In this document: positions 2,575-45,800 of the stretch, in pieces
How the letters are laid out: every line of letters starts with the position of its first letter
How positions within the stretch are numbered: position 1 is the stretch's first letter
Source: Macrostomum hystrix
Taxonomy: Eukaryota > Animalia > Platyhelminthes
DNA: 64,000 bases
NCBI GenBank assembly: GCA_950097015.1
Contig: CATNEN010000012.1
Span: 2,480,001-2,544,000 of the forward strand
Direction: 5' to 3'
Translations under genes and position numbers: made by a program
The notes under the pieces: model-generated
Seen by the model: only the letters and a program-made list of their open reading frames with translations
What the model was told of the DNA's origin: nothing
The model's database searches: none

Positions 2575-3830
2575 CACTGGAGACAGGTGGATTAGACACA
2601 CTGGAGACAGGTGGATTAGACACACTGGAGACAGGTGAATTAGACACACTGGAGACAGGTGGATTAGACACACTGGAGACAGGTGGATTAGACACCCTGG
2701 AGACAGGTGGATTAGACACACTGGAGACAGATGGATTAGACACACTGGAGACAGGTGAATTAGACACACTGGAGACAGATGGATTAGACACACTGGAGAC
2801 AGGTGGATTAGACACACTGGAGACAGGTGGATTAGACACACTGGAGACAGGTGAATTAGACACACTGGAGACAGATGGATTAGACACACTGGAGACAGGT
2901 GGATTAGACACACTGGAGACAGGTGAATTAGACACACTGGAGACAGGTGGATTAGACACACTGGAGACAGGTGAATTAGACACACTGGAGACAGGTGAAT
3001 TAGACACACTGGAGACAGATGGATTAGACACACTGGAGACAGGTGGATTAGACACACTGGAGACAGGTGGATTAGACACACTGGAGACAGGTGAATTAGA
3101 CACACTGGAGACAGGTGGATTAGACACACTGGAGACAGGTGAATTAGACACACTGGAGACAGGTGGATTAGACACACTGGAGACAGGTGGATTAGACACA
3201 CTGGAGACAGGTGGATTAGACACACTGGAGACAGGTGGATTAGACACACTGGAGACAGGTGAATTAGACACACTGGAGACAGATGGATTAGACACACTGG
3301 AGACAGGTGGATTAGACACACTGGAGACAGGTGGATTAGACACACTGGAGACAGGTGAATTAGACACACTGGAGACAGGTGGATTAGACACACTGGAGAC
3401 AGGTGGATTAGACACACTGGAGACAGGTGGATTAGACACACTGGAGACAGGTGGATTAGACACACTGGAGACAGGTGGATTAGACACACTGGAGACAGGT
3501 GAATTAGACACACTGGAGACAGGTGGATTAGACACACTGGAGACAGGTGAATTAGACACACTGGAGACAGGTGGATTAGACACACTGGAGACAGGTGGAT
3601 TAGACACACTGGAGACAGGTGGATTAGACACACTGGAGACAGGTGGATTAGACACACTGGAGACAGGTGAATTAGACACACTGGAGACAGATGGATTAGA
3701 CACACTGGAGACAGGTGGATTAGACACACTGGAGACAGGTGGATTAGATACACTGGAGACAGGTGGATTAGACACACTGGAGACAGGTGGATTAGACACA
3801 CTGGAGACAGATGGATTAGACACACTGGAG
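2575..3830. repeat. 24-bp minisatellite (CTGGAGACAGGTGGATTAGACACA)
   Basis: About 52 tandem units; source of the artefactual CLIHLSPV and SSVSNPPV ORFs. Confidence 0.97.
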
Positions 3831-4114
3831 TTTATCCTATTACCAGTAAAGAGGTAGTTTGCTATGTAATAAAGCTTTGAGTCTTACTGATTTCGTTATT
3901 AAATGAGTATAAAATATTTCGACATCGAGCCCAGTTGACCTGACTTATAACAAACAAAAAGCTGCTAAAAAGCTGACAAAAATAAACAAAAACAAAAATG
4001 ACCAGTTGAGTTTTAATCATTTAAAAACAAATTTACAGAAAAAAAATACAAAATTACTTTAATGAGTTTGAAGCACAACATGAGGACTAATTAAATCGCT
4101 TCTTTTTCTCGTCT

Positions 4115-37275: not shown

Positions 37276-38189
37276 GCTGCTTCACAGCACAGGCTGGAAG
37301 CGAGTTGGGCCATAGACTGCAAGGTTCTTGCTCGTCTCTGTTTAAGAATCCTTTATAGTAAATAAGCTGACTTTGCTTTTTCATTGTAATTTTGAATTTG
37401 AATATTAGCTAAAAATCTATAGGTATTGTAAGTACAATACCAATTGAATTAAAAAATGTTACGCAACACTTTTCAGCTCTGGGTTGAGGGACAAGATAAG
37501 GGACCTTGTCCTTTGCCTCAATTAAGGTTGGCTGGAAAATATTTTTTATGCTTCGCTATCATTCAGTTCTGTTGAAGAGAATTTTAATGCAGAACAACTT
37601 AACTGATGATGAATTTCTTTCATGTTAACTATAATATAAATCTCTCTACCGTTTAATATATTTTCTAGCAGCTGTCATAGGTTTTTAGAAAGCTTAAACT
37701 ACAGGTAAGAATCTCTCAAATGTACTTTAAAAGCTGCCTTGGTTGCAGCTTTATTTTTATTACATTTTTTGTTTGAAAAATACAATTGGGTTTTTAATAT
37801 TGTGTTTCTGAGAAACTGATGCCTATCTTACGCTACTCATAAAAGAAATTTTCTATGTTAATAGTTTAAATAACTTTTCTATTAATTGTGTACACGAACT
37901 TTTAAGCAGTAAAATTACTACTGTGATAATTTAATTCCATCTAAAATATAGAAGAGATGAAAAGAATGAGTTTGTCTATTTGTCTAAATAGGTACTGCAA
38001 CCCACGAAATATTAAAATGTGTCAAATTATTACTACTTTTTCTGGGGCATACATAATACTGACCATGTTAGTGAGTAGCATGTGGCGAAATGAACTTTCT
38101 AAGATTCGAAATTGATATATGTAATGGTATATCTGGGTGGAAGAAATATTATCTCTTTATCATTCAGTCATCTGATTGGTCAACAACTT

Positions 38190-38256
38190 TCAGTGTTTTG
38201 ATTGGTCATTAGCTCTCAGTGTTTTGATTGGTCATCAGCTTTCAGTGTTTTGACTG
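38190..38256. repeat. 26-bp satellite, left remnant split off by the retrotransposon insertion
   Basis: About 2.5 units identical in family to 42894-46410. Confidence 0.9.
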
Positions 38257-38945
38257 TAAACACCACACTCCCAGACACGAAGGCAGACAGAGACAGCAGT
38301 TGCGACATAGCAGAGAGCGAACGAGGGAAGGGCACCGTCTATGGCCCACATGCAATATATTTGCTGATAAATTGTTTCGAAGAAAATAATTAAAACGGCG
38401 AAGAAAGCAAAAAGCACAGAAAAGCAAGAAAAAGGAAGCCAGGAAAAGGCAAAAAAGAAAATTTCACACCACGCAGCGCGAAGAGACAAGGCTGGGCAGC
38501 ACGCGGGCGCCGGCTGAAATACGACCCAGCACAAGGCGGAGGGGTGGGTGTCTGAGGTGGGTGTTTACAACCAATCAGCGAACACCGATTGGACACTAAA
38601 CACCACACTCCCAGACACGAAGGCAGACAGAGACAGCAGTTGCGACATAGCAGAGAGCGAACGAGGGAAGGGCACCGTCTATGGCCCAAACCCAAAAAAA
38701 AGAAGAGGAAGGAGGGAGGCACGCAACACGAAAAGCAAAAGAGGGTGACACCGGTACGCACTTAAAACTGAGCTAAAACATAAAACACAAAATGGTTGAA
38801 AGTGTAAAAAAAGTTACAGCAAGACCAGCGAGCATAGCAAACGACAACTAAACGCGAAAGCAAAAATACAGAAGGCAGAAGCACTTGGTCCACAGCGAGT
38901 ACAAAGAAGGAGGTCACAAAGAATATTTCAGCGACACACCAAGGG

Positions 38946-39983
38946 TCAAACGCACGCTGATAGCTTTTGAGCAGCGGCCAGTTGCAGGTCGAGGCCCGAC
39001 TCCAACCCAAGGTACGCCTCCACCGCCGAGCTCCGCCAGTCTCCCAGCGCCTTGACGACGGGCAGCGGGATGCCTTCCCGAAAGGCTAGGGAGGCACCAC
39101 CGCGACGAAGGCTGTGTGGCGAGAGCGATAGACCTCCCAGGCCGGCGAGGTTGACTGCGCGGCGAAACAGGCGGTAGAACCGGGTGGCGGTCATTGGCAC
39201 GAGACCACCGCAATGGCGGAAAGCGAAGAGATGGGCTGAAGCAGGGACGGGCTGGTTGGCGTGCAGGTGGTGTCGCAGCGCTGCCACCGGACAGAGCGGG
39301 TGCTGCGCCTCGCGTCGAAGGCGTGGCAGGACTACGCGGTGCACTCGCTCGCGGAACTGGTTGGTCTTGGACTTGCGGACATGCAGGATTGCCAGGTCCG
39401 AGCCCAGCCGTAGGTCTTCAACGATGATGGCCTCTCCCGGTGGCGGCATTGGGGTCGGGCAACACAGGTTTGCGCGCCGCAGCAGGCCCCAGAATCCGAC
39501 CAGTACAGCCGCCCAGAAGGCTGCGTCCTCCGGAATATGCAGCTGCAGTACTCCCCGCAGTTTGAGCAGGTGGTTTGGCTTGATTGGAGCCTTGCGCGCG
39601 GGTGGCTTGGCCAGCTTGCGTCGCACGCCGCGGAGGAGCAGGTCGATGCGAGGGTCGCTTGGGAGGCCGCGGCCAGTCTGCAGCTTGCAGTACAGGTGGG
39701 CGGCGTTAAGGTATGCACCGATGCTGGCATGCGATGTGAGGCGGTCAGCCAGCACGATGACGTAGTGCGCGATCTGCTGTGCTGACGGTCTGGTGCTGTC
39801 GATGCGCGTTCGCTTACAGAAGCGTTGCCAGGAGGCAATTTGGCAGCGGTAGGAGCGCGCTGTGGTGCCTGCGAAGGCCAGGCTGCAGAGCTCTTGGTAG
39901 CGGCGGCTGAGGTGCGAACCCGGGACCGTAGGCGAGCGATCTGCAAAGAAAGGAATTGGCGGGAGGCGGACGAAAGGGTGTGC
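38946..39983 (-). CDS. Tyrosine recombinase (integrase) of the retrotransposon
   Basis: The frame is open from 39983 (after TGA at 39986-39984) to the stop at 38946. N-terminal SLAFAGTTARSYRCQIASWQRFCKR. Catalytic set: R (GLLRRANL), K (RKSKTNQ), HSLRRG, GDW, Y (AVEAY). No ATG before the catalytic core. Confidence 0.93.
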   Translation of the reverse strand, partial: AHPFVRLPPIPFFADRSPTVPGSHLSRRYQELCSLAFAGTTARSYRCQIASWQRFCKRTRIDSTRPSAQQIAHYVIVLADRLTSHASIGAYLNAAHLYCKLQTGRGLPSDPRIDLLLRGVRRKLAKPPARKAPIKPNHLLKLRGVLQLHIPEDAAFWAAVLVGFWGLLRRANLCCPTPMPPPGEAIIVEDLRLGSDLAILHVRKSKTNQFRERVHRVVLPRLRREAQHPLCPVAALRHHLHANQPVPASAHLFAFRHCGGLVPMTATRFYRLFRRAVNLAGLGGLSLSPHSLRRGGASLAFREGIPLPVVKALGDWRSSAVEAYLGLESGLDLQLAAAQKLSACV

Positions 39984-40018
39984 TCATGAAGGTTGTCAGT
40001 TTTAATGTCCACTGTGCC

Positions 40019-41776
40019 TTAGAGCCGGAGCAGAAAATTTGCCAGCTCGCTGATGTCATCTGCGCGACTGCCGCTGTCCGCAAAGATCTGGAACGTCCCA
40101 GGCACGTGGAAGGCTTGGATAACGAGATCGTGGTGAGCGGCGAGAAGCGCGAGCTGCTGCAGGGCTGTGTTGACAATCGGGTTCGGCGAGGAGCCTTTGT
40201 TGATGGCGCCGACAGCGGCCGTGCTGTCCGAGTAGATCACCAGGTTGCTTCCTGGTTGCAGCTGTTGTTGAAAGTGCAGAGCCGTGAATACGGGCGCGAG
40301 GCTCTCCTTAAAATTGATGTGCAGAGTTTCGAGCTCCTGGCTATCACGTTGCCAGTCGATGATGAGCCAGTTAGTGACGCCTGGGCCGCGGATGATGCCG
40401 CAGCCTCCCCAATTGGATGCGTCCGACTCGATTGCCCAGGCTGGCCCGGCGGTCCTCCAAATGCGGCAGCTGGGGGTCTTGGCCAGGCAGGCAACCCACC
40501 AGAGGATGGTCTCGCGGAGGTCGTTGTGCATGCGCAGTTTGTGGCAGTGCTGCTTTAGCTTATTGAGTTCCAGCAGGAGCGGCCTCAGGAAACACCTCCC
40601 GATACGGACGACCTGGCAAACCCAGTTAATGCGGCCACAGAGAGATTGGAGCTGGCGCTTGGTGATGCGCTTGTGCGAGAGTGCGGATTGCAGCTGCGCT
40701 TTCGTGGCCTCGAGCTTGTCCTTTGGGAGCTCTAGCAGGCCGCTGTTGGTGTCAATCATGACGCCCAGGTACACCAGCCTAGTGCACGGTGGAGCTACTT
40801 TGCTCCAGTTGATGGAGAAGCCTAGACGCCGCAGCAGATGAAGCAGAGTGTCCAGAGCTTGCTGGCAGGCGATCTCGGTTTCTGCCGCCACAGCAAAGTC
40901 GTCGAGGTAACTCCCGATGTTGCTGAAGCCGCGTCGCTGCATCATGCGCTTGATGGACTGGCTGAGGCGGTGGAAGACTTCCACTGAAGCTGCCGCGCCG
41001 AATGGCAGGCGCGTGTCGCACAGGTACATCGGGCCCGGTTGATCGCTGAACTTCCACTGTAGACCAGTGTAGCGGAAGTCGTGGGGACTGATTCCGACAC
41101 TGCGGTAAGCATTGGCCAGGTCGACCTTCGCCATGAACCAACCCGGCTGCAGCTTGGCAGTGAACTGGCTGACAGTCTCAAACTTGATCTGGTAGTCAGA
41201 GGAGAAACGGCTGTTCAGCGAGAGGTCCGGAGGTTGCGAGCAGTCGTGGATCAGCCGGATCTTGTTGTTCCCTTTCGGGATGGCACCGAGGGCGCTGACG
41301 ACGTCCGGCTTGTTGCTGACTTTCACATAACGGCCGTTGGCCACTTCTTCCCGCACCTGCTGCTCGACCAGTTGCCGATTACTGTCAGCGGAGAAGTAGT
41401 TCTGAGAGCAAGTGCTATTAGGCTGATTGTCAGGGGCACTGGGGCAGGTGAGTCGGAAGCCGTTGCGAACACCGTTCAGCAGGAAGTCACGATCGGGATC
41501 GCCGAGCAGCTCGGCATCCCAGGCGGCGCTGATAAGGTCAGAGGAGAAGGCAACAGACTCGATGGGCTTAGCTTGAGGCCGGCCAGGGGGGAGCGGGTGA
41601 TCGACCTTGTCAGAATCGGCCGGTGCAGTGGGGCCGTCGATCAAGTCCCCCGGCCGGCCGCAATCTAGTTTTTTGACGTGCAGAGCTGGCGCGGGTGTGC
41701 CGCGTAGCAGGCAGAGCACGCGTGTCTGAACTTGCAGTCGCGTCTGTGGCAGCTGTTTCGGTTGAATTTGACGCAC
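40019..41776 (-). CDS. Reverse transcriptase + RNase H (pol) of the retrotransposon
   Basis: Motifs KIRLIHDCS, AKVDLANAYRSV, RLPFG, SYLDDFAV and YLGVMID. RNase H: ESDAS, HINFKES, YSDSTAA, HVPG...ADSGSR. Overlaps gag in the -1 frame and has no ATG near its start. Confidence 0.95.
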   Translation of the reverse strand: MRQIQPKQLPQTRLQVQTRVLCLLRGTPAPALHVKKLDCGRPGDLIDGPTAPADSDKVDHPLPPGRPQAKPIESVAFSSDLISAAWDAELLGDPDRDFLLNGVRNGFRLTCPSAPDNQPNSTCSQNYFSADSNRQLVEQQVREEVANGRYVKVSNKPDVVSALGAIPKGNNKIRLIHDCSQPPDLSLNSRFSSDYQIKFETVSQFTAKLQPGWFMAKVDLANAYRSVGISPHDFRYTGLQWKFSDQPGPMYLCDTRLPFGAAASVEVFHRLSQSIKRMMQRRGFSNIGSYLDDFAVAAETEIACQQALDTLLHLLRRLGFSINWSKVAPPCTRLVYLGVMIDTNSGLLELPKDKLEATKAQLQSALSHKRITKRQLQSLCGRINWVCQVVRIGRCFLRPLLLELNKLKQHCHKLRMHNDLRETILWWVACLAKTPSCRIWRTAGPAWAIESDASNWGGCGIIRGPGVTNWLIIDWQRDSQELETLHINFKESLAPVFTALHFQQQLQPGSNLVIYSDSTAAVGAINKGSSPNPIVNTALQQLALLAAHHDLVIQAFHVPGTFQIFADSGSRADDISELANFLLRL

Positions 41777-42741
41777 AGCTCCCGACCTTCAGCGTCGGTT
41801 GGGCCGACCAAGCCGCTTGTCTGGTTTCTCATTTTGCTGAACTTAAAACCAGGCCGCGAATAGGTCGAACTGCCAGCAGGATTGGATTTAGGCGCCAGAA
41901 TGTGCTTGGACAGCAGCTGCAACGACTCCCGTTCCCAGCTGCCGCTGGTCTGGTGCTGCATGATCCTGAAGTCTTCGTCGTAGTCGTTGAGGGCGGCCTG
42001 GCTGAAGCCCTGATGCATAAACTCGCCGAACTGCACGCAATACCGCACATAGGCTTTCAGCTCACTCAAATCCATTGTGCCGTTTCTCGTTGTGACTAGG
42101 GCACCGTCGTCAAGCAGTCTCAGCAGGATGCGGCCGCTGCCTGCGACCCACTGGCCGGCCGTGATGTTCTCAGTTCGGGCTCTAGTCTTCGCTGATTGGG
42201 GCGCAGGCTCCTCGAAGTCACGATCGATGAAGTCTCTCACCAGCAGAGGCCTCGAGGTGACAGCGGGCTTGGTGTAGCTGCCTGGCAGTTCCCAGTCCGG
42301 CACTGGCAGATGCTGCTCCGGCTCGTGGGCACTGAGGGTTTGGTTAAGCAGCATCGGGCTAGTCGACTTACCACTCTGTCTGCGCTGGCCGTCCTTTCCA
42401 AGCTCGGCTTCGATCTCCGCTGTTTGGCGCTGAAGCGTTCTCAGGCGGAGCAGCTTCTCTTGTCGGGCTATCCTCTGGTCCAGGTCGTCGCCGCCTCCCA
42501 GATCACTCGCCCGGTCCGGGTTCGCCTCGCCGTCCTCTTCGCTGCAGGTGCTGCCGTCGTCCTCGACTTGGGCCGATGCGGTTGACCTTTGCTGCACACG
42601 GCGTGTGGTTCGGCTGGCTAAACTAGATTGTTCCAGTCTGACTTGCAGTTCACGCTTGCGACCGCTGCTAGGCAGGCCAAGTTGAATCAGGCGGTCTCTT
42701 AACTGGCGAGCCGTAAGCCGGTCAATTGGAAGCTCAGCCAT
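41665..42741 (-). CDS. Gag-like protein (358 aa) with N-terminal SAP-like motif and C-terminal Cys/His knuckle
   Basis: ATG at 42741, 12 nt inside the A1 boundary. LTARQLRDRLIQLGLPSSGRKRELQVRL fits the SAP consensus. C-terminus is CVKFNRNSCHRRDCKFRHACSACYAAHPRQLC. Confidence 0.88.
   Translation of the reverse strand: MAELPIDRLTARQLRDRLIQLGLPSSGRKRELQVRLEQSSLASRTTRRVQQRSTASAQVEDDGSTCSEEDGEANPDRASDLGGGDDLDQRIARQEKLLRLRTLQRQTAEIEAELGKDGQRRQSGKSTSPMLLNQTLSAHEPEQHLPVPDWELPGSYTKPAVTSRPLLVRDFIDRDFEEPAPQSAKTRARTENITAGQWVAGSGRILLRLLDDGALVTTRNGTMDLSELKAYVRYCVQFGEFMHQGFSQAALNDYDEDFRIMQHQTSGSWERESLQLLSKHILAPKSNPAGSSTYSRPGFKFSKMRNQTSGLVGPTDAEGRELCVKFNRNSCHRRDCKFRHACSACYAAHPRQLCTSKN
41668..41674 (-). promoter_or_regulatory. 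Candidate -1 ribosomal frameshift slippery heptamer A_AAA_AAC with downstream GC stem-loop
   Basis: Gag ends TCA AAA AAC TAG; the -1 frame reads AAA AAA CTA GAT = pol KKLD. CGGCCGG...CCGGCCG stem with inner GGGG/CCCC starts about 7 nt downstream. Confidence 0.7.
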
Positions 42742-42893
42742 TGCAGTAAGAGAGAAAATTTCACACCACGCAGCGCGAAGAGACAAGGCTGGGCAGCACG
42801 CGGGCGCCGGCTGAAATACGACCCAGCACAAGGCGGAGGGGTGGGTGTCTGAGGTGGGTGTTTACAACCAATCAGCGAACACCGATTGGACAC

Positions 42894-45800
42894 GTCATTA
42901 GCTCTCAGTGTTTTGATTGGTCATCAGCTCTCAGTGTTTTGATTGGTCATCAGCTCTCAGTGTTTTGACTGGTCATCAGCTTTCAGTGTTTTGACTGGTC
43001 ATCAGCTCTCAGTGTTTTGACTGGTCATCAGCTCTCAGTGTTTTGACTGGTCATCAGCTCTCAGTGTTTTGACTGGTCATCAGCTCTCAGTGTTTTGACT
43101 GGTCATCAGCTTTCAGTGTTTTGACTGGTCATCAGCTCTCAGTGTTTTGAATGGTCATCAGCTTTCAGTGTTTTGACTGGTCATCAGCTTTCAGTGTTTT
43201 GAATGGTCATCAGCTCTCAGTGTTTTGACTGGTCATCAGCTTTCAGTGTTTTGACTGGTCATCAGCTCTCAGTGTTTTGACTGGTCATCAGCTTTCAGTG
43301 TTTTGACTGGTCATCAGCTCTCAGTGTTTTGACTGGTCATCAGCTTTCAGTGTTTTGACTGGTCATCAGCTTTCAGTGTTTTGACTGGTCATCAGCTCTC
43401 AGTGTTTTGAATGGTCATCAGCTTTCAGTGTTTTGACTGGTCATCAGCTTTCAGTGTTTTGACTGGTCATCAGCTCTCAGTGTTTTGACTGGTCATCAGC
43501 TCTCAGTGTTTTGACTGGTCATCAGCTCTCAGTGTTTTGACTGGTCATCAGCTCTCAGTGTTTTGACTGGTCATCAGCTCTCAGTGTTTTGACTGGTCAT
43601 CAGCTTTCAGTGTTTTGACTGGTCATCAGCTCTCAGTGTTTTGACTGGTCATCAGCTCTCAGTGTTTTGACTGGTCATCAGCTTTCAGTGTTTTGACTGG
43701 TCATCAGCTCTCAGTGTTTTGACTGGTCATCAGCTCTCAGTGTTTTGACTGGTCATCAGCTCTCAGTGTTTTGACTGGTCATCAGCTCTCAGTGTTTTGA
43801 CTGGTCATCAGCTCTCAGTGTTTTGACTGGTCATCAGCTTTCAGTGTTTTGACTGGTCATCAGCTCTCAGTGTTTTGACTGGTCATCAGCTTTCAGTGTT
43901 TTGACTGGTCATCAGCTCTCAGTGTTTTGACTGGTCATCAGCTTTCAGTGTTTTGACTGGTCATCAGCTCTCAGTGTTTTGACTGGTCATCAGCTCTCAG
44001 TGTTTTGACTGGTCATCAGCTCTCAGTGTTTTGACTGGTCATCAGCTTTCAGTGTTTTGACTGGTCATCAGCTCTCAGTGTTTTGACTGGTCATCAGCTC
44101 TCAGTGTTTTGACTGGTCATCAGCTCTCAGTGTTTTGACTGGTCATCAGCTTTCAGTGTTTTGACTGGTCATCAGCTCTCAGTGTTTTGACTGGTCATCA
44201 GCTCTCAGTGTTTTGACTGGTCATCAGCTCTCAGTGTTTTGACTGGTCATCAGCTCTCAGTGTTTTGACTGGTCATCAGCTTTCAGTGTTTTGACTGGTC
44301 ATCAGCTCTCAGTGTTTTGAATGGTCATCAGCTTTCAGTGTTTTGACTGGTCATCAGCTTTCAGTGTTTTGAATGGTCATCAGCTCTCAGTGTTTTGACT
44401 GGTCATCAGCTTTCAGTGTTTTGACTGGTCATCAGCTCTCAGTGTTTTGACTGGTCATCAGCTCTCAGTGTTTTGACTGGTCATCAGCTCTCAGTGTTTT
44501 GACTGGTCATCAGCTTTCAGTGTTTTGACTGGTCATCAGCTCTCAGTGTTTTGAATGGTCATCAGCTTTCAGTGTTTTGACTGGTCATCAGCTTTCAGTG
44601 TTTTGACTGGTCATCAGCTCTCAGTGTTTTGACTGGTCATCAGCTTTCAGTGTTTTGACTGGTCATCAGCTCTCAGTGTTTTGACTGGTCATCAGCTCTC
44701 AGTGTTTTGACTGGTCATCAGCTCTCAGTGTTTTGACTGGTCATCAGCTTTCAGTGTTTTGACTGGTCATCAGCTCTCAGTGTTTTGACTGGTCATCAGC
44801 TCTCAGTGTTTTGACTGGTCATCAGCTTTCAGTGTTTTGACTGGTCATCAGCTCTCAGTGTTTTGACTGGTCATCAGCTCTCAGTGTTTTGACTGGTCAT
44901 CAGCTCTCAGTGTTTTGACTGGTCATCAGCTCTCAGTGTTTTGACTGGTCATCAGCTCTCAGTGTTTTGACTGGTCATCAGCTTTCAGTGTTTTGACTGG
45001 TCATCAGCTCTCAGTGTTTTGACTGGTCATCAGCTTTCAGTGTTTTGACTGGTCATCAGCTCTCAGTGTTTTGACTGGTCATCAGCTTTCAGTGTTTTGA
45101 CTGGTCATCAGCTCTCAGTGTTTTGACTGGTCATCAGCTTTCAGTGTTTTGACTGGTCATCAGCTCTCAGTGTTTTGACTGGTCATCAGCTCTCAGTGTT
45201 TTGACTGGTCATCAGCTCTCAGTGTTTTGACTGGTCATCAGCTCTCAGTGTTTTGACTGGTCATCAGCTCTCAGTGTTTTGACTGGTCATCAGCTCTCAG
45301 TGTTTTGACTGGTCATCAGCTCTCAGTGTTTTGACTGGTCATCAGCTTTCAGTGTTTTGACTGGTCATCAGCTCTCAGTGTTTTGACTGGTCATCAGCTT
45401 TCAGTGTTTTGACTGGTCATCAGCTCTCAGTGTTTTGACTGGTCATCAGCTTTCAGTGTTTTGACTGGTCATCAGCTCTCAGTGTTTTGACTGGTCATCA
45501 GCTCTCAGTGTTTTGACTGGTCATCAGCTCTCAGTGTTTTGACTGGTCATCAGCTTTCAGTGTTTTGATTGGTCATCAGCTTTCAGTGTTTTGATTGGTC
45601 ATCGCCTCCGATGCTTCGATTGTTTATCAGCAGCTTCTGGTGTTTTGATTGGCTATCAGTAGCTTCTAGTGTTTTGATTGGTTATCAGCAGCTTCTGGTG
45701 TTTTGATTGGTCATCAGCTTTCAGTGTTTTGATTGGTCATCGCCTCCGATGCTTCGATTGTTTATCAGCAGCTTCTGGTGTTTTGATTGGCTATCAGTAG

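What the first reader, a model, noticed from the sequence alone, without database searches (positions are those of the whole stretch)
39940..42372. Retrotransposon appears to make its recombinase by splicing: in-frame gag(SAP)-tyrosine recombinase fusion
Seen in sequence: the YR frame has no ATG before its catalytic core and is closed upstream by a stop at 39986-39984, so it cannot be translated alone. Just upstream of the conserved YR N-terminus is a strong 3' splice site on the minus strand: CTTTCGTCCGCCTCCCGCCAATTCCTTTCTTTGCAG|AT (AG at 39942-39941, CTGAC branch-like motif about 55 nt upstream). It is phase 1 for the YR frame. Inside gag is a perfect donor, AGTG|GTAAGT (exon ends 42372), also phase 1. 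Removing the 2431-nt intron gives a 1365-nt ORF (454 aa): 123 gag residues with the SAP-like motif and a coiled segment, then D-RSPTVPG...YR. Established: DIRS-order elements integrate with a YR, and SAP domains bind DNA. Inference: one transcript yields Gag, Gag-Pol (by frameshift) and SAP-YR (by splicing), and SAP could tether the integrase to chromatin or satellite DNA. I do not know of this arrangement being described for Ngaro/PAT elements, but I could not search. A flatworm spliced-leader AUG joined at this acceptor would be in the wrong frame for YR, which favours cis-splicing.
Basis: partly seen in the sequence, partly recalled or inferred. Interest (0 to 1): 0.85.

Follow-up and report, generated by a model that had tools for sequence, protein, structure and literature searches.

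The report
Retrotransposon recombinase made by gag-to-recombinase splicing
A jumping gene in this flatworm-like genome most likely makes its integration enzyme by splicing the start of its gag gene onto a recombinase reading frame that has no start codon, and the same hidden intron is present in related elements of oysters, limpets and acorn worms.

Summary
A complete Ngaro-type tyrosine-recombinase (YR) retrotransposon lies on the minus strand at 42893-38257. Its YR frame opens only after a stop at 39986-39984. It does not overlap pol and has no ATG before the catalytic half. A GTAAGT donor follows 42372 and a pyrimidine-tract/CAG acceptor precedes 39940; both are phase 1.

Direct RNA evidence could not be obtained: the four runs laid were contigs showing only the unspliced form.

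The comparative evidence is strong:
- Nine other YR families in this genome (31-42% YR identity) carry a pyrimidine tract plus CAG at the same place, in phase 1 in every copy but one.
- A sister family has a genomic copy (L055) lacking exactly a 2,404-nt GT..AG interval. It reads as one ATG-started SAP-coil-YR frame between intact element termini, as a retro-copied spliced RNA would.
- A Macrostomum lignano protein and a metagenomic ORF are contiguous SAP-YR proteins.
- RefSeq gene models in an oyster, a limpet and an acorn worm join the gag N-terminus to YR across an RT-containing phase-1 intron of 2.1-3.3 kb.

No paper describing this was found. SAP tethering to satellite DNA stays speculative. 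The scan had not reported this before.

The parts
42748..42893 (-). A1 terminal repeat (5' end of the element)
   Evidence: 99% identical to A2 at 38451-38596. All full copies start here.
42372..42741 (-). Exon 1: gag ATG plus 123 codons and 1 nt, encoding a SAP domain, an acidic/Gly linker and a coiled segment
   Evidence: Pfam SAP E=1.2e-6. 94-100% aa identity in 12 near-full-length matches.
42366..42371 (-). 5' splice donor GTAAGT (context AGTG|GTAAGT), phase 1
   Evidence: It is the only GTAAGT upstream of the acceptor. It is unchanged in all copies, including the 85-90% diverged ones.
39941..42371 (-). Proposed 2,431-nt intron holding the rest of gag, the frameshift site and all of pol (RT/RNase H)
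   Evidence: Homologous introns are 2,404 nt (sister family), 2,118 nt (oyster), 2,248 nt (limpet) and 3,291 nt (acorn worm).
41665..42741 (-). Full gag ORF (358 aa, CCCH-like zinc knuckle near the C-terminus)
41668..41674 (-). A AAA AAC slippery heptamer directly before the gag stop; pol lies in the -1 frame
Evidence: Read; frames.
40019..41776 (-). pol open frame (RT plus RNase H, no room for a methyltransferase)
39995..39999 (-). CTGAC branch-point-like motif, with its A 55 nt before the AG
   Evidence: sequence only.
39941..39970 (-). Pyrimidine tract (16 of 20 Y) and CAG 3' splice acceptor
   Evidence: Intact in the full-length copies; a 10-nt tract deletion is seen only in an internally deleted copy.
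38946..39940 (-). Exon 2: tyrosine recombinase (core-binding and catalytic domains) with its stop codon
   Evidence: 98-100% aa identity in 8 full copies.
38234..38695 (-). 3' split direct repeats: B1 (38695-38574), A2 (38596-38451), B2 (38355-38234)

Best explanation
This is a recently active Ngaro-type YR retrotransposon whose full-length RNA has two fates. Left unspliced, it is the genomic RNA and the mRNA for Gag and, by -1 frameshifting, Gag-RT/RNase H. Alternatively the host spliceosome removes a 2,431-nt phase-1 intron (42371-39941). That joins the first 123 codons of gag (SAP domain plus coiled segment) to the YR frame at 39940 and gives a 454-residue SAP-coil-YR protein started at the gag AUG. 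Shown here: the splice signals, their matching phase and the lack of any other usable start. Also shown: conservation of the acceptor across divergent families, and the same splice in a retro-copied sister element and in annotated gene models of three other animal phyla. Inferred: that this particular element is spliced in vivo. Also inferred: that sharing the Gag N-terminus gives YR a start codon plus DNA-binding or co-assembly properties.
For: (2) Four copies are 99.6-100% identical and eight have intact YR frames, so the element was active recently and YR must be expressed.
(3) In nine other YR families of the same genome (31-42% aa identity) the YR frame has no early ATG. A pyrimidine tract (14-18 of 20 Y) plus CAG lies 95-110 nt before the conserved Trp codon. 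It is phase 1 in every copy except one with an 11-nt deletion.
(4) In the sister family the full-length copy reads CACAAG|GTGAGC at the end of exon 1. Locus L055 joins that exact exon end to the base after TTTCACAG, which deletes 2,404 nt. L055 reads as one ATG-started 446-residue SAP-coil-YR protein (a 450-codon stop-to-stop frame). It keeps A1 and B1-A2-B2 termini and is 100% identical to the full-length copy on both sides.
(5) M. lignano UniProt A0A1I8J2F9 is a contiguous SAP-coil-YR fragment with the junction at the same place. ENA contig L061 carries a contiguous 477-aa SAP-YR ORF.
(6) Three RefSeq models splice a gag N-terminal exon to YR across phase-1 GT..AG introns: XP_062601811 (Saccostrea cucullata), XP_050388701 (Patella vulgata) and XP_077986280 (Glandiceps talaboti). 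The introns are 2,118, 2,248 and 3,291 nt and contain an RT ORF.
Against: - No junction read was seen. The only runs available were contigs of uncertain type, and those that crossed the sites spanned donor and acceptor unspliced.
- No processed copy of this family exists in the genome: the distance from the SAP exon to YR is about 2,803 nt (2,803-2,814) in all 10 copies.
- RefSeq and UniProt models are predictions whose RNA support I could not inspect.
- The L055 junction carries a 4-nt AGGT microhomology, so template switching is not strictly excluded.
- A second phase-1 GTGAG site at 42065 could serve as an alternative donor.
Confidence: 0.8

Rival explanations
1. YR is translated from the unspliced RNA without splicing, by non-AUG initiation, an internal ribosome entry site, or termination-reinitiation after the pol stop.
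For: [quoted passage not shown] In some sister families pol runs 24-48 nt past the acceptor and overlaps the YR frame.
Against: Here three stops separate pol from YR, and the first AUG is codon 178, after the core-binding domain. This rival does not explain the conserved pyrimidine-tract/CAG in phase 1. It also does not explain L055 or the spliced gene models.
Confidence: 0.06
2. The conserved acceptor is used for spliced-leader trans-splicing, giving a YR mRNA without gag sequence.
For: The acceptor itself is generic.
Against: The acceptor is phase 1. From general knowledge, flatworm leaders end in AUG, and such an AUG would read the wrong frame; the leader sequence was not checked here. L055 carries the element's own A1 and gag exon 1 joined to YR. 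Oyster, limpet and acorn-worm models use cis exons.
Confidence: 0.05
3. Splicing occurs, but from another donor (for example 42065, TTGA|GTGAGC, also phase 1), giving a longer Gag part.
For: The site exists and is in phase.
Against: It is a weaker match to the donor consensus. Homologous first exons end right after the coiled segment and are 115-171 codons long, which matches 42372 (123 codons) and not 225 codons.
Confidence: 0.05
4. The signals are fortuitous, and L055 and similar copies are internal deletions made by template switching or recombination at AGGT microhomology.
For: Other internally deleted copies with non-splice-like ends exist: A1 joined to about 40116-40125, and a 38955-39748 deletion.
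Against: The deletion ends exactly at GT and AG with consensus flanks. It preserves the frame and recurs at the same protein position in another species. The same intron phase is seen in four phyla.
Confidence: 0.04

Closest known systems
Ngaro superfamily of YR retrotransposons (DIRS order; Goodwin and Poulter 2004, as cited)
   Same: It has gag, RT/RNase H and YR in that order, A1...B1-A2-B2 split direct repeats, and no protease, DDE integrase or methyltransferase.
   Different: Published descriptions that I could search treat YR as a third free-standing or overlapping ORF. Here YR has no start and appears to need a gag exon supplied by splicing. The Gag N-terminus is a SAP domain.
Retroviral and errantiviral subgenomic splicing (env mRNAs; avian leukosis virus env taking its AUG and first codons from gag; foamy-virus pol mRNA). 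This comparison rests on general knowledge.
   Same: One primary transcript is used with a donor in or near gag and an acceptor before a downstream gene. The unspliced RNA is kept as the genome. The downstream protein can borrow the gag AUG.
   Different: The spliced product here is the integration enzyme, not env. It carries a 123-residue folded Gag segment. The element is a YR retrotransposon, not an LTR element.
RefSeq 'integrase/recombinase xerD homolog' gene models of Saccostrea cucullata and Glandiceps talaboti, and LOC126807879 of Patella vulgata
   Same: They have the same two-exon structure, the same phase-1 intron containing gag-C and RT, and the same YR family.
   Different: They are annotated as host genes, not as transposon products. 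Pfam finds no SAP domain in their first exons.
Processed (intron-less) retro-copies of spliced retroelement RNAs
   Same: L055 keeps both element termini and lacks exactly the intron.
   Different: It belongs to a sister family. No such copy of the window's family was found.

Membership tests
Ngaro (YR retrotransposons, DIRS order) | Reverse transcriptase and RNase H ORF | tested here: met
   RVT_1 E=1.4e-13 and a weak RVT_thumb hit in the 585-aa pol frame.
Ngaro (YR retrotransposons, DIRS order) | Tyrosine recombinase instead of a DDE integrase | tested here: met
   Phage_integrase E=6.3e-7. The H-x-x-R motif and the C-terminal Tyr region are visible in the translation. No integrase or protease hit.
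Ngaro (YR retrotransposons, DIRS order) | Split direct repeats A1 ... B1-A2-B2 | tested here: met
   A1 42893-42748 matches A2 38596-38451 (99%). B1 38695-38574 matches B2 38355-38234 (90-100%). L055 has the same layout.
Ngaro (YR retrotransposons, DIRS order) | No methyltransferase domain downstream of RT/RNase H (this separates Ngaro from DIRS1-like and PAT-like elements) | tested here: met
   Pol is only 585 aa with no further Pfam domain, and 78 nt separate the pol stop from exon 2.
Retroelement with a spliced subgenomic mRNA | Donor and acceptor in matching phase that create an open fusion frame | tested here: met
   Conserved across families and phyla.
Retroelement with a spliced subgenomic mRNA | Spliced RNA observed for this element | tested here: inconclusive
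   Only contigs of uncertain library type were available, and they show the unspliced form.
Retroelement with a spliced subgenomic mRNA | Footprint of the spliced RNA in DNA (a processed copy) | tested here: met
   Met for the sister family only: L055 compared with the full-length copy on contig 39. Not found for the window's own family.

The most novel reading that the evidence does not exclude
Animal Ngaro-type retrotransposons carry an ancient, conserved phase-1 intron that spans gag-C and pol. Regulated splicing of the genomic RNA would then be their general way of making the recombinase, as a Gag-N-terminus/YR fusion. The shared N-terminus (SAP in flatworms) would couple YR to Gag assemblies or to target DNA. 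A retroelement would thus have kept an intron for hundreds of millions of years despite replicating through RNA.
Probability: 0.6. Interest if true: 0.8.

Novelty: new variant of a known kind. Interest (0 to 1): 0.72.

Why it matters
How YR retrotransposons express a recombinase ORF that often lacks a start codon has been left vague, as 'separate or overlapping ORFs'. A conserved gag-to-YR splice would give a concrete and testable answer. It would show that a whole class of retroelements must balance splicing against keeping unspliced genomic RNA, as retroviruses do. It would explain why genome annotators call 'xerD-like integrase' genes with a 2-3 kb intron full of RT. It would also define the real N-terminus of the enzyme, which matters for any biochemical work on eukaryotic YR integration.

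Tried and rejected
- **Read evidence.** One run search found 7 runs, none on record as RNA. Four were laid on 38600-42895. All were contigs. Donor and acceptor were spanned unspliced and no 42372|39940 joint appeared. This is inconclusive, not negative. The 'goes back' joint in that output comes from starting my stretch just after the A2 repeat.
- **Genome letters.** After that I ran genome searches with no loci returned, plus one short targeted pattern.
- **Joined model.** As the operators instructed, I did not build, search or fold the joined 454-residue model of this window; the exons were searched separately. In scripts 65 and 70 I joined exons of three deposited RefSeq models in memory, only to confirm that they translate to the deposited proteins. 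Nothing was printed or saved.
- **Long-range RNA pairing.** I tested pairing between gag 42538-42468 and the acceptor region 40039-39898. It beats shuffles (z=-3.4, 0 of 400) and is a reciprocal best partner. However, a cross-family control scores almost as well, and copies show no compensatory changes. I do not count it as evidence.
- **Coiled segment.** Complex prediction on two copies of exon-1 residues 70-123 gave no verdict.
- **Satellite targeting.** Only 3 of about 12 copies sit in tandem arrays, so a satellite preference is not established.
- **Literature.** Seven full-text searches and seven papers found no description of YR splicing in DIRS or Ngaro elements. Goodwin and Poulter 2004 is not held.
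Full report
**What is there**

A complete element lies on the minus strand from 42893 to 38257. Its parts, in order:
- Repeat A1 (42893-42748).
- A gag ORF (ATG at 42741, stop at 41667-41665).
- A pol frame in -1 (41776-40019).
- A third frame open from 39983 to the stop at 38948-38946.
- B1 (38695-38574), A2 (38596-38451) and B2 (38355-38234).

Pfam gives SAP at gag residues 7-38, RVT_1 in pol and Phage_integrase in the third frame. Pol is 585 aa, which leaves no room for a methyltransferase. With the split direct repeats, this is the Ngaro layout. The copy is embedded in a 26-bp satellite array on both sides.

**Check of the observation**

- Exon 1 (42741-42372) is 370 nt, so it ends on the first base of a codon.
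- The next bases are GTAAGT.
- The YR frame has stops at 40004, 39998 and 39986, and pol stops at 40021-40019. The frames therefore do not overlap, and a pol-to-YR frameshift is impossible.
- The first in-frame ATG is codon 178 (141 in the 96% subfamily), after the N-terminal core-binding domain.
- The acceptor CCTTTCTTTGCAG|AT puts exon 2 (from 39940) on codon position 2, which is the matching phase.

Taken alone, the pair is not statistically impressive. There are three GTRAG sites upstream and five acceptor-like sites in the element.

**Direct RNA test**

The one run search found seven runs, none on record as RNA. Four were laid on 38600-42895, within the 6,000-letter limit. All were contigs. 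Those that crossed the donor and the acceptor did so unspliced, and no 42372|39940 joint appeared. Contigs drop minor forms and the runs may be DNA, so this decides nothing.

**Copies in the genome**

The 220-Mb genome holds four copies that are 99.6-100% identical, at least five at about 96%, and some older fragments at 82-90%.
- Eight copies keep an intact 345-codon YR frame with 98-100% aa identity. The family was therefore active recently, and YR is under selection.
- Donor and acceptor are unchanged in all full-length copies. The donor also survives in the 85-90% copies.
- No copy of this family lacks the intron. The SAP exon lies about 2,803 nt (2,803-2,814) before YR in all ten pairs.

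**Sister families in the same genome**

A six-frame search with the exon-2 protein found many other YR elements at 31-42% identity.
- In nine such lineages the YR frame is closed upstream by a stop and has no ATG before the conserved domain. In four copies an ATG lies upstream of the acceptor, in what would be intron.
- Each lineage has a pyrimidine tract (14-18 of 20) ending in CAG, 95-110 nt before the conserved Trp codon.
- The AG is in phase 1 in every case except one copy with an 11-nt deletion.
- Pol ends 81-107 nt before this site in some families and 24-48 nt after it in others. Pol coding therefore does not explain the conservation.

**A retro-copied spliced RNA (locus L055)**

L055 comes from contig 1 and belongs to a family with 34% YR identity to the window's element.
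- It has one open frame that starts with ATG and reads SAP domain, Gly-rich linker, coiled segment and then YR. The protein from the ATG is 446 residues; the stop-to-stop frame is 450 codons.
- It is bounded by A1 and B1-A2-B2 and is 2,083 bp long.
- The full-length copy of the same family on contig 39 matches it 100% over the first 348 nt and again from 2,404 nt further on.
- At the break the full-length copy reads CACAAG|GTGAGC and TTTCACAG|GTCGC.
- L055 therefore lacks exactly a GT..AG interval, in phase 1. That is what a reverse-transcribed spliced RNA would look like.
- The AGGT microhomology inherent to consensus splice sites leaves template switching formally possible, but much less likely.

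**Other species**

- With L055's natural ORF as query, the best hit is Macrostomum lignano UniProt A0A1I8J2F9. It is a 344-residue fragment that runs from SAP through the coil into YR, with the junction at the same residue. This also suggests that the window comes from a macrostomid-like flatworm.
- An exhaustive profile search found most relatives as bare YR ORFs of about 300-340 residues, and some with N-terminal extensions.
- P0124 is a contiguous 477-residue SAP-YR ORF on an ENA contig.
- Three RefSeq proteins map as two exons: XP_062601811 (Saccostrea cucullata), XP_050388701 (Patella vulgata) and XP_077986280 (Glandiceps talaboti). The first exon is the first 121-171 codons of an ORF1 of 357-388 codons, and the second exon is YR.
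- Their introns are 2,118, 2,248 and 3,291 nt, with ends gtaaga..tttcag, gtatgt..aaacag and gtaatg..attgcag. All three are phase 1 and contain an RVT_1 ORF.
- The same intron, in the same phase, is thus modelled in a flatworm, two molluscs and a hemichordate.

**Mechanism proposed**

One transcript starts in A1. Unspliced, it serves as the genome and encodes Gag. Through the A AAA AAC heptamer at 41674-41668, just before the gag stop, it also encodes Gag-RT/RNase H (frames verified, shift not tested).

A fraction is spliced from 42372 to 39940. This yields SAP-coil-YR from the gag AUG. The spliced RNA keeps both termini and can occasionally be copied back into DNA, as L055 shows.

What the shared N-terminus does is inference. 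It could supply the start codon, nuclear or DNA targeting through SAP, or co-assembly with Gag through the coiled segment. A dimer prediction for the coil gave no verdict. Pfam found no SAP domain in the non-flatworm first exons.

In scripts the exons of deposited RefSeq models were joined in memory, only to verify that they translate to the deposited proteins.

**Novelty**

Seven full-text searches and seven papers gave only the standard account: three ORFs, with YR possibly frameshifted or overlapping. They gave no account of splicing. The original Ngaro paper is not in the library, so prior mention there cannot be excluded. The arrangement is implicit in RefSeq annotations, where it is labelled as a host xerD-like gene.

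I rate it a new variant of a known kind. It is a YR retrotransposon that uses retrovirus-style subgenomic splicing, and it appears to be ancient.

Noticed in passing
window 42538-42468 and 40039-39898 (minus strand): An exon-1 segment upstream of the donor is complementary to the region spanning the acceptor, in helices of about 10, 14 and 12 bp with the pyrimidine tract looped out. Each is the other's best partner within the element, and z=-3.4 against shuffles. A similar pairing appears in the sister family. However, a cross-family control scores nearly as well, and copies show no compensatory changes.
   Followed up: partly
window 42894-44400 and 38128-38256; L055:350-922 and 3006-3851; L011:4563-4918: The window's copy sits inside a 26-bp satellite array. 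The processed sister copy L055 sits inside a 21-bp satellite, and one truncated copy abuts a 20-bp satellite. The other copies are not in tandem arrays, so a target preference is not established.
   Followed up: partly
L016/L022 (G000 contig 7, about 4.640 Mb) and L026 (contig 3, about 16.042 Mb): Internally deleted derivatives join the A1 repeat to about window 40116-40125 without splice-like ends. One also has a 10-nt deletion in the pyrimidine tract that removes the upstream stop and opens an ATG-started frame into a truncated YR.
   Followed up: partly
window 38955-39748: A 792-nt deletion inside YR appears in contigs of two runs of 'organism C'. Similar deletions appear in genomic copies on contigs 1 and 7, so a deleted subfamily seems to have spread.
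   Followed up: no
L047 (G000 contig 41, 3647996-3651916): In one sister family, pol and YR lie in a single open frame of at least 818 codons that runs through the conserved pyrimidine-tract/CAG. An extra base near the conserved pol C-terminal motif suggests an indel and not a different expression strategy.
   Followed up: partly
G000 contig 7, 8654539-8654907 (copy L008): The gag exon-1 match sits in an open frame of 1,256 codons, so this 96% copy seems to have gag and pol fused in one frame.
   Followed up: no
window 41668-41674: An A AAA AAC heptamer lies immediately before the gag stop, with pol in the -1 frame. This fits programmed frameshifting and was also noted by another first-stage finding.
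   Followed up: partly
protein P0079 (988 aa): A YR domain with 44% identity to L055's is fused in one predicted protein to homocysteine S-methyltransferase and pterin-binding domains. It is probably a gene-model chimera of a transposon with a methionine synthase gene.
   Followed up: no
window 39332-40012 (minus strand): A 226-codon ORF in the alternative frame crosses the acceptor and overlaps the YR N-terminus. It is probably a by-product of the 59% G+C content.
   Followed up: no
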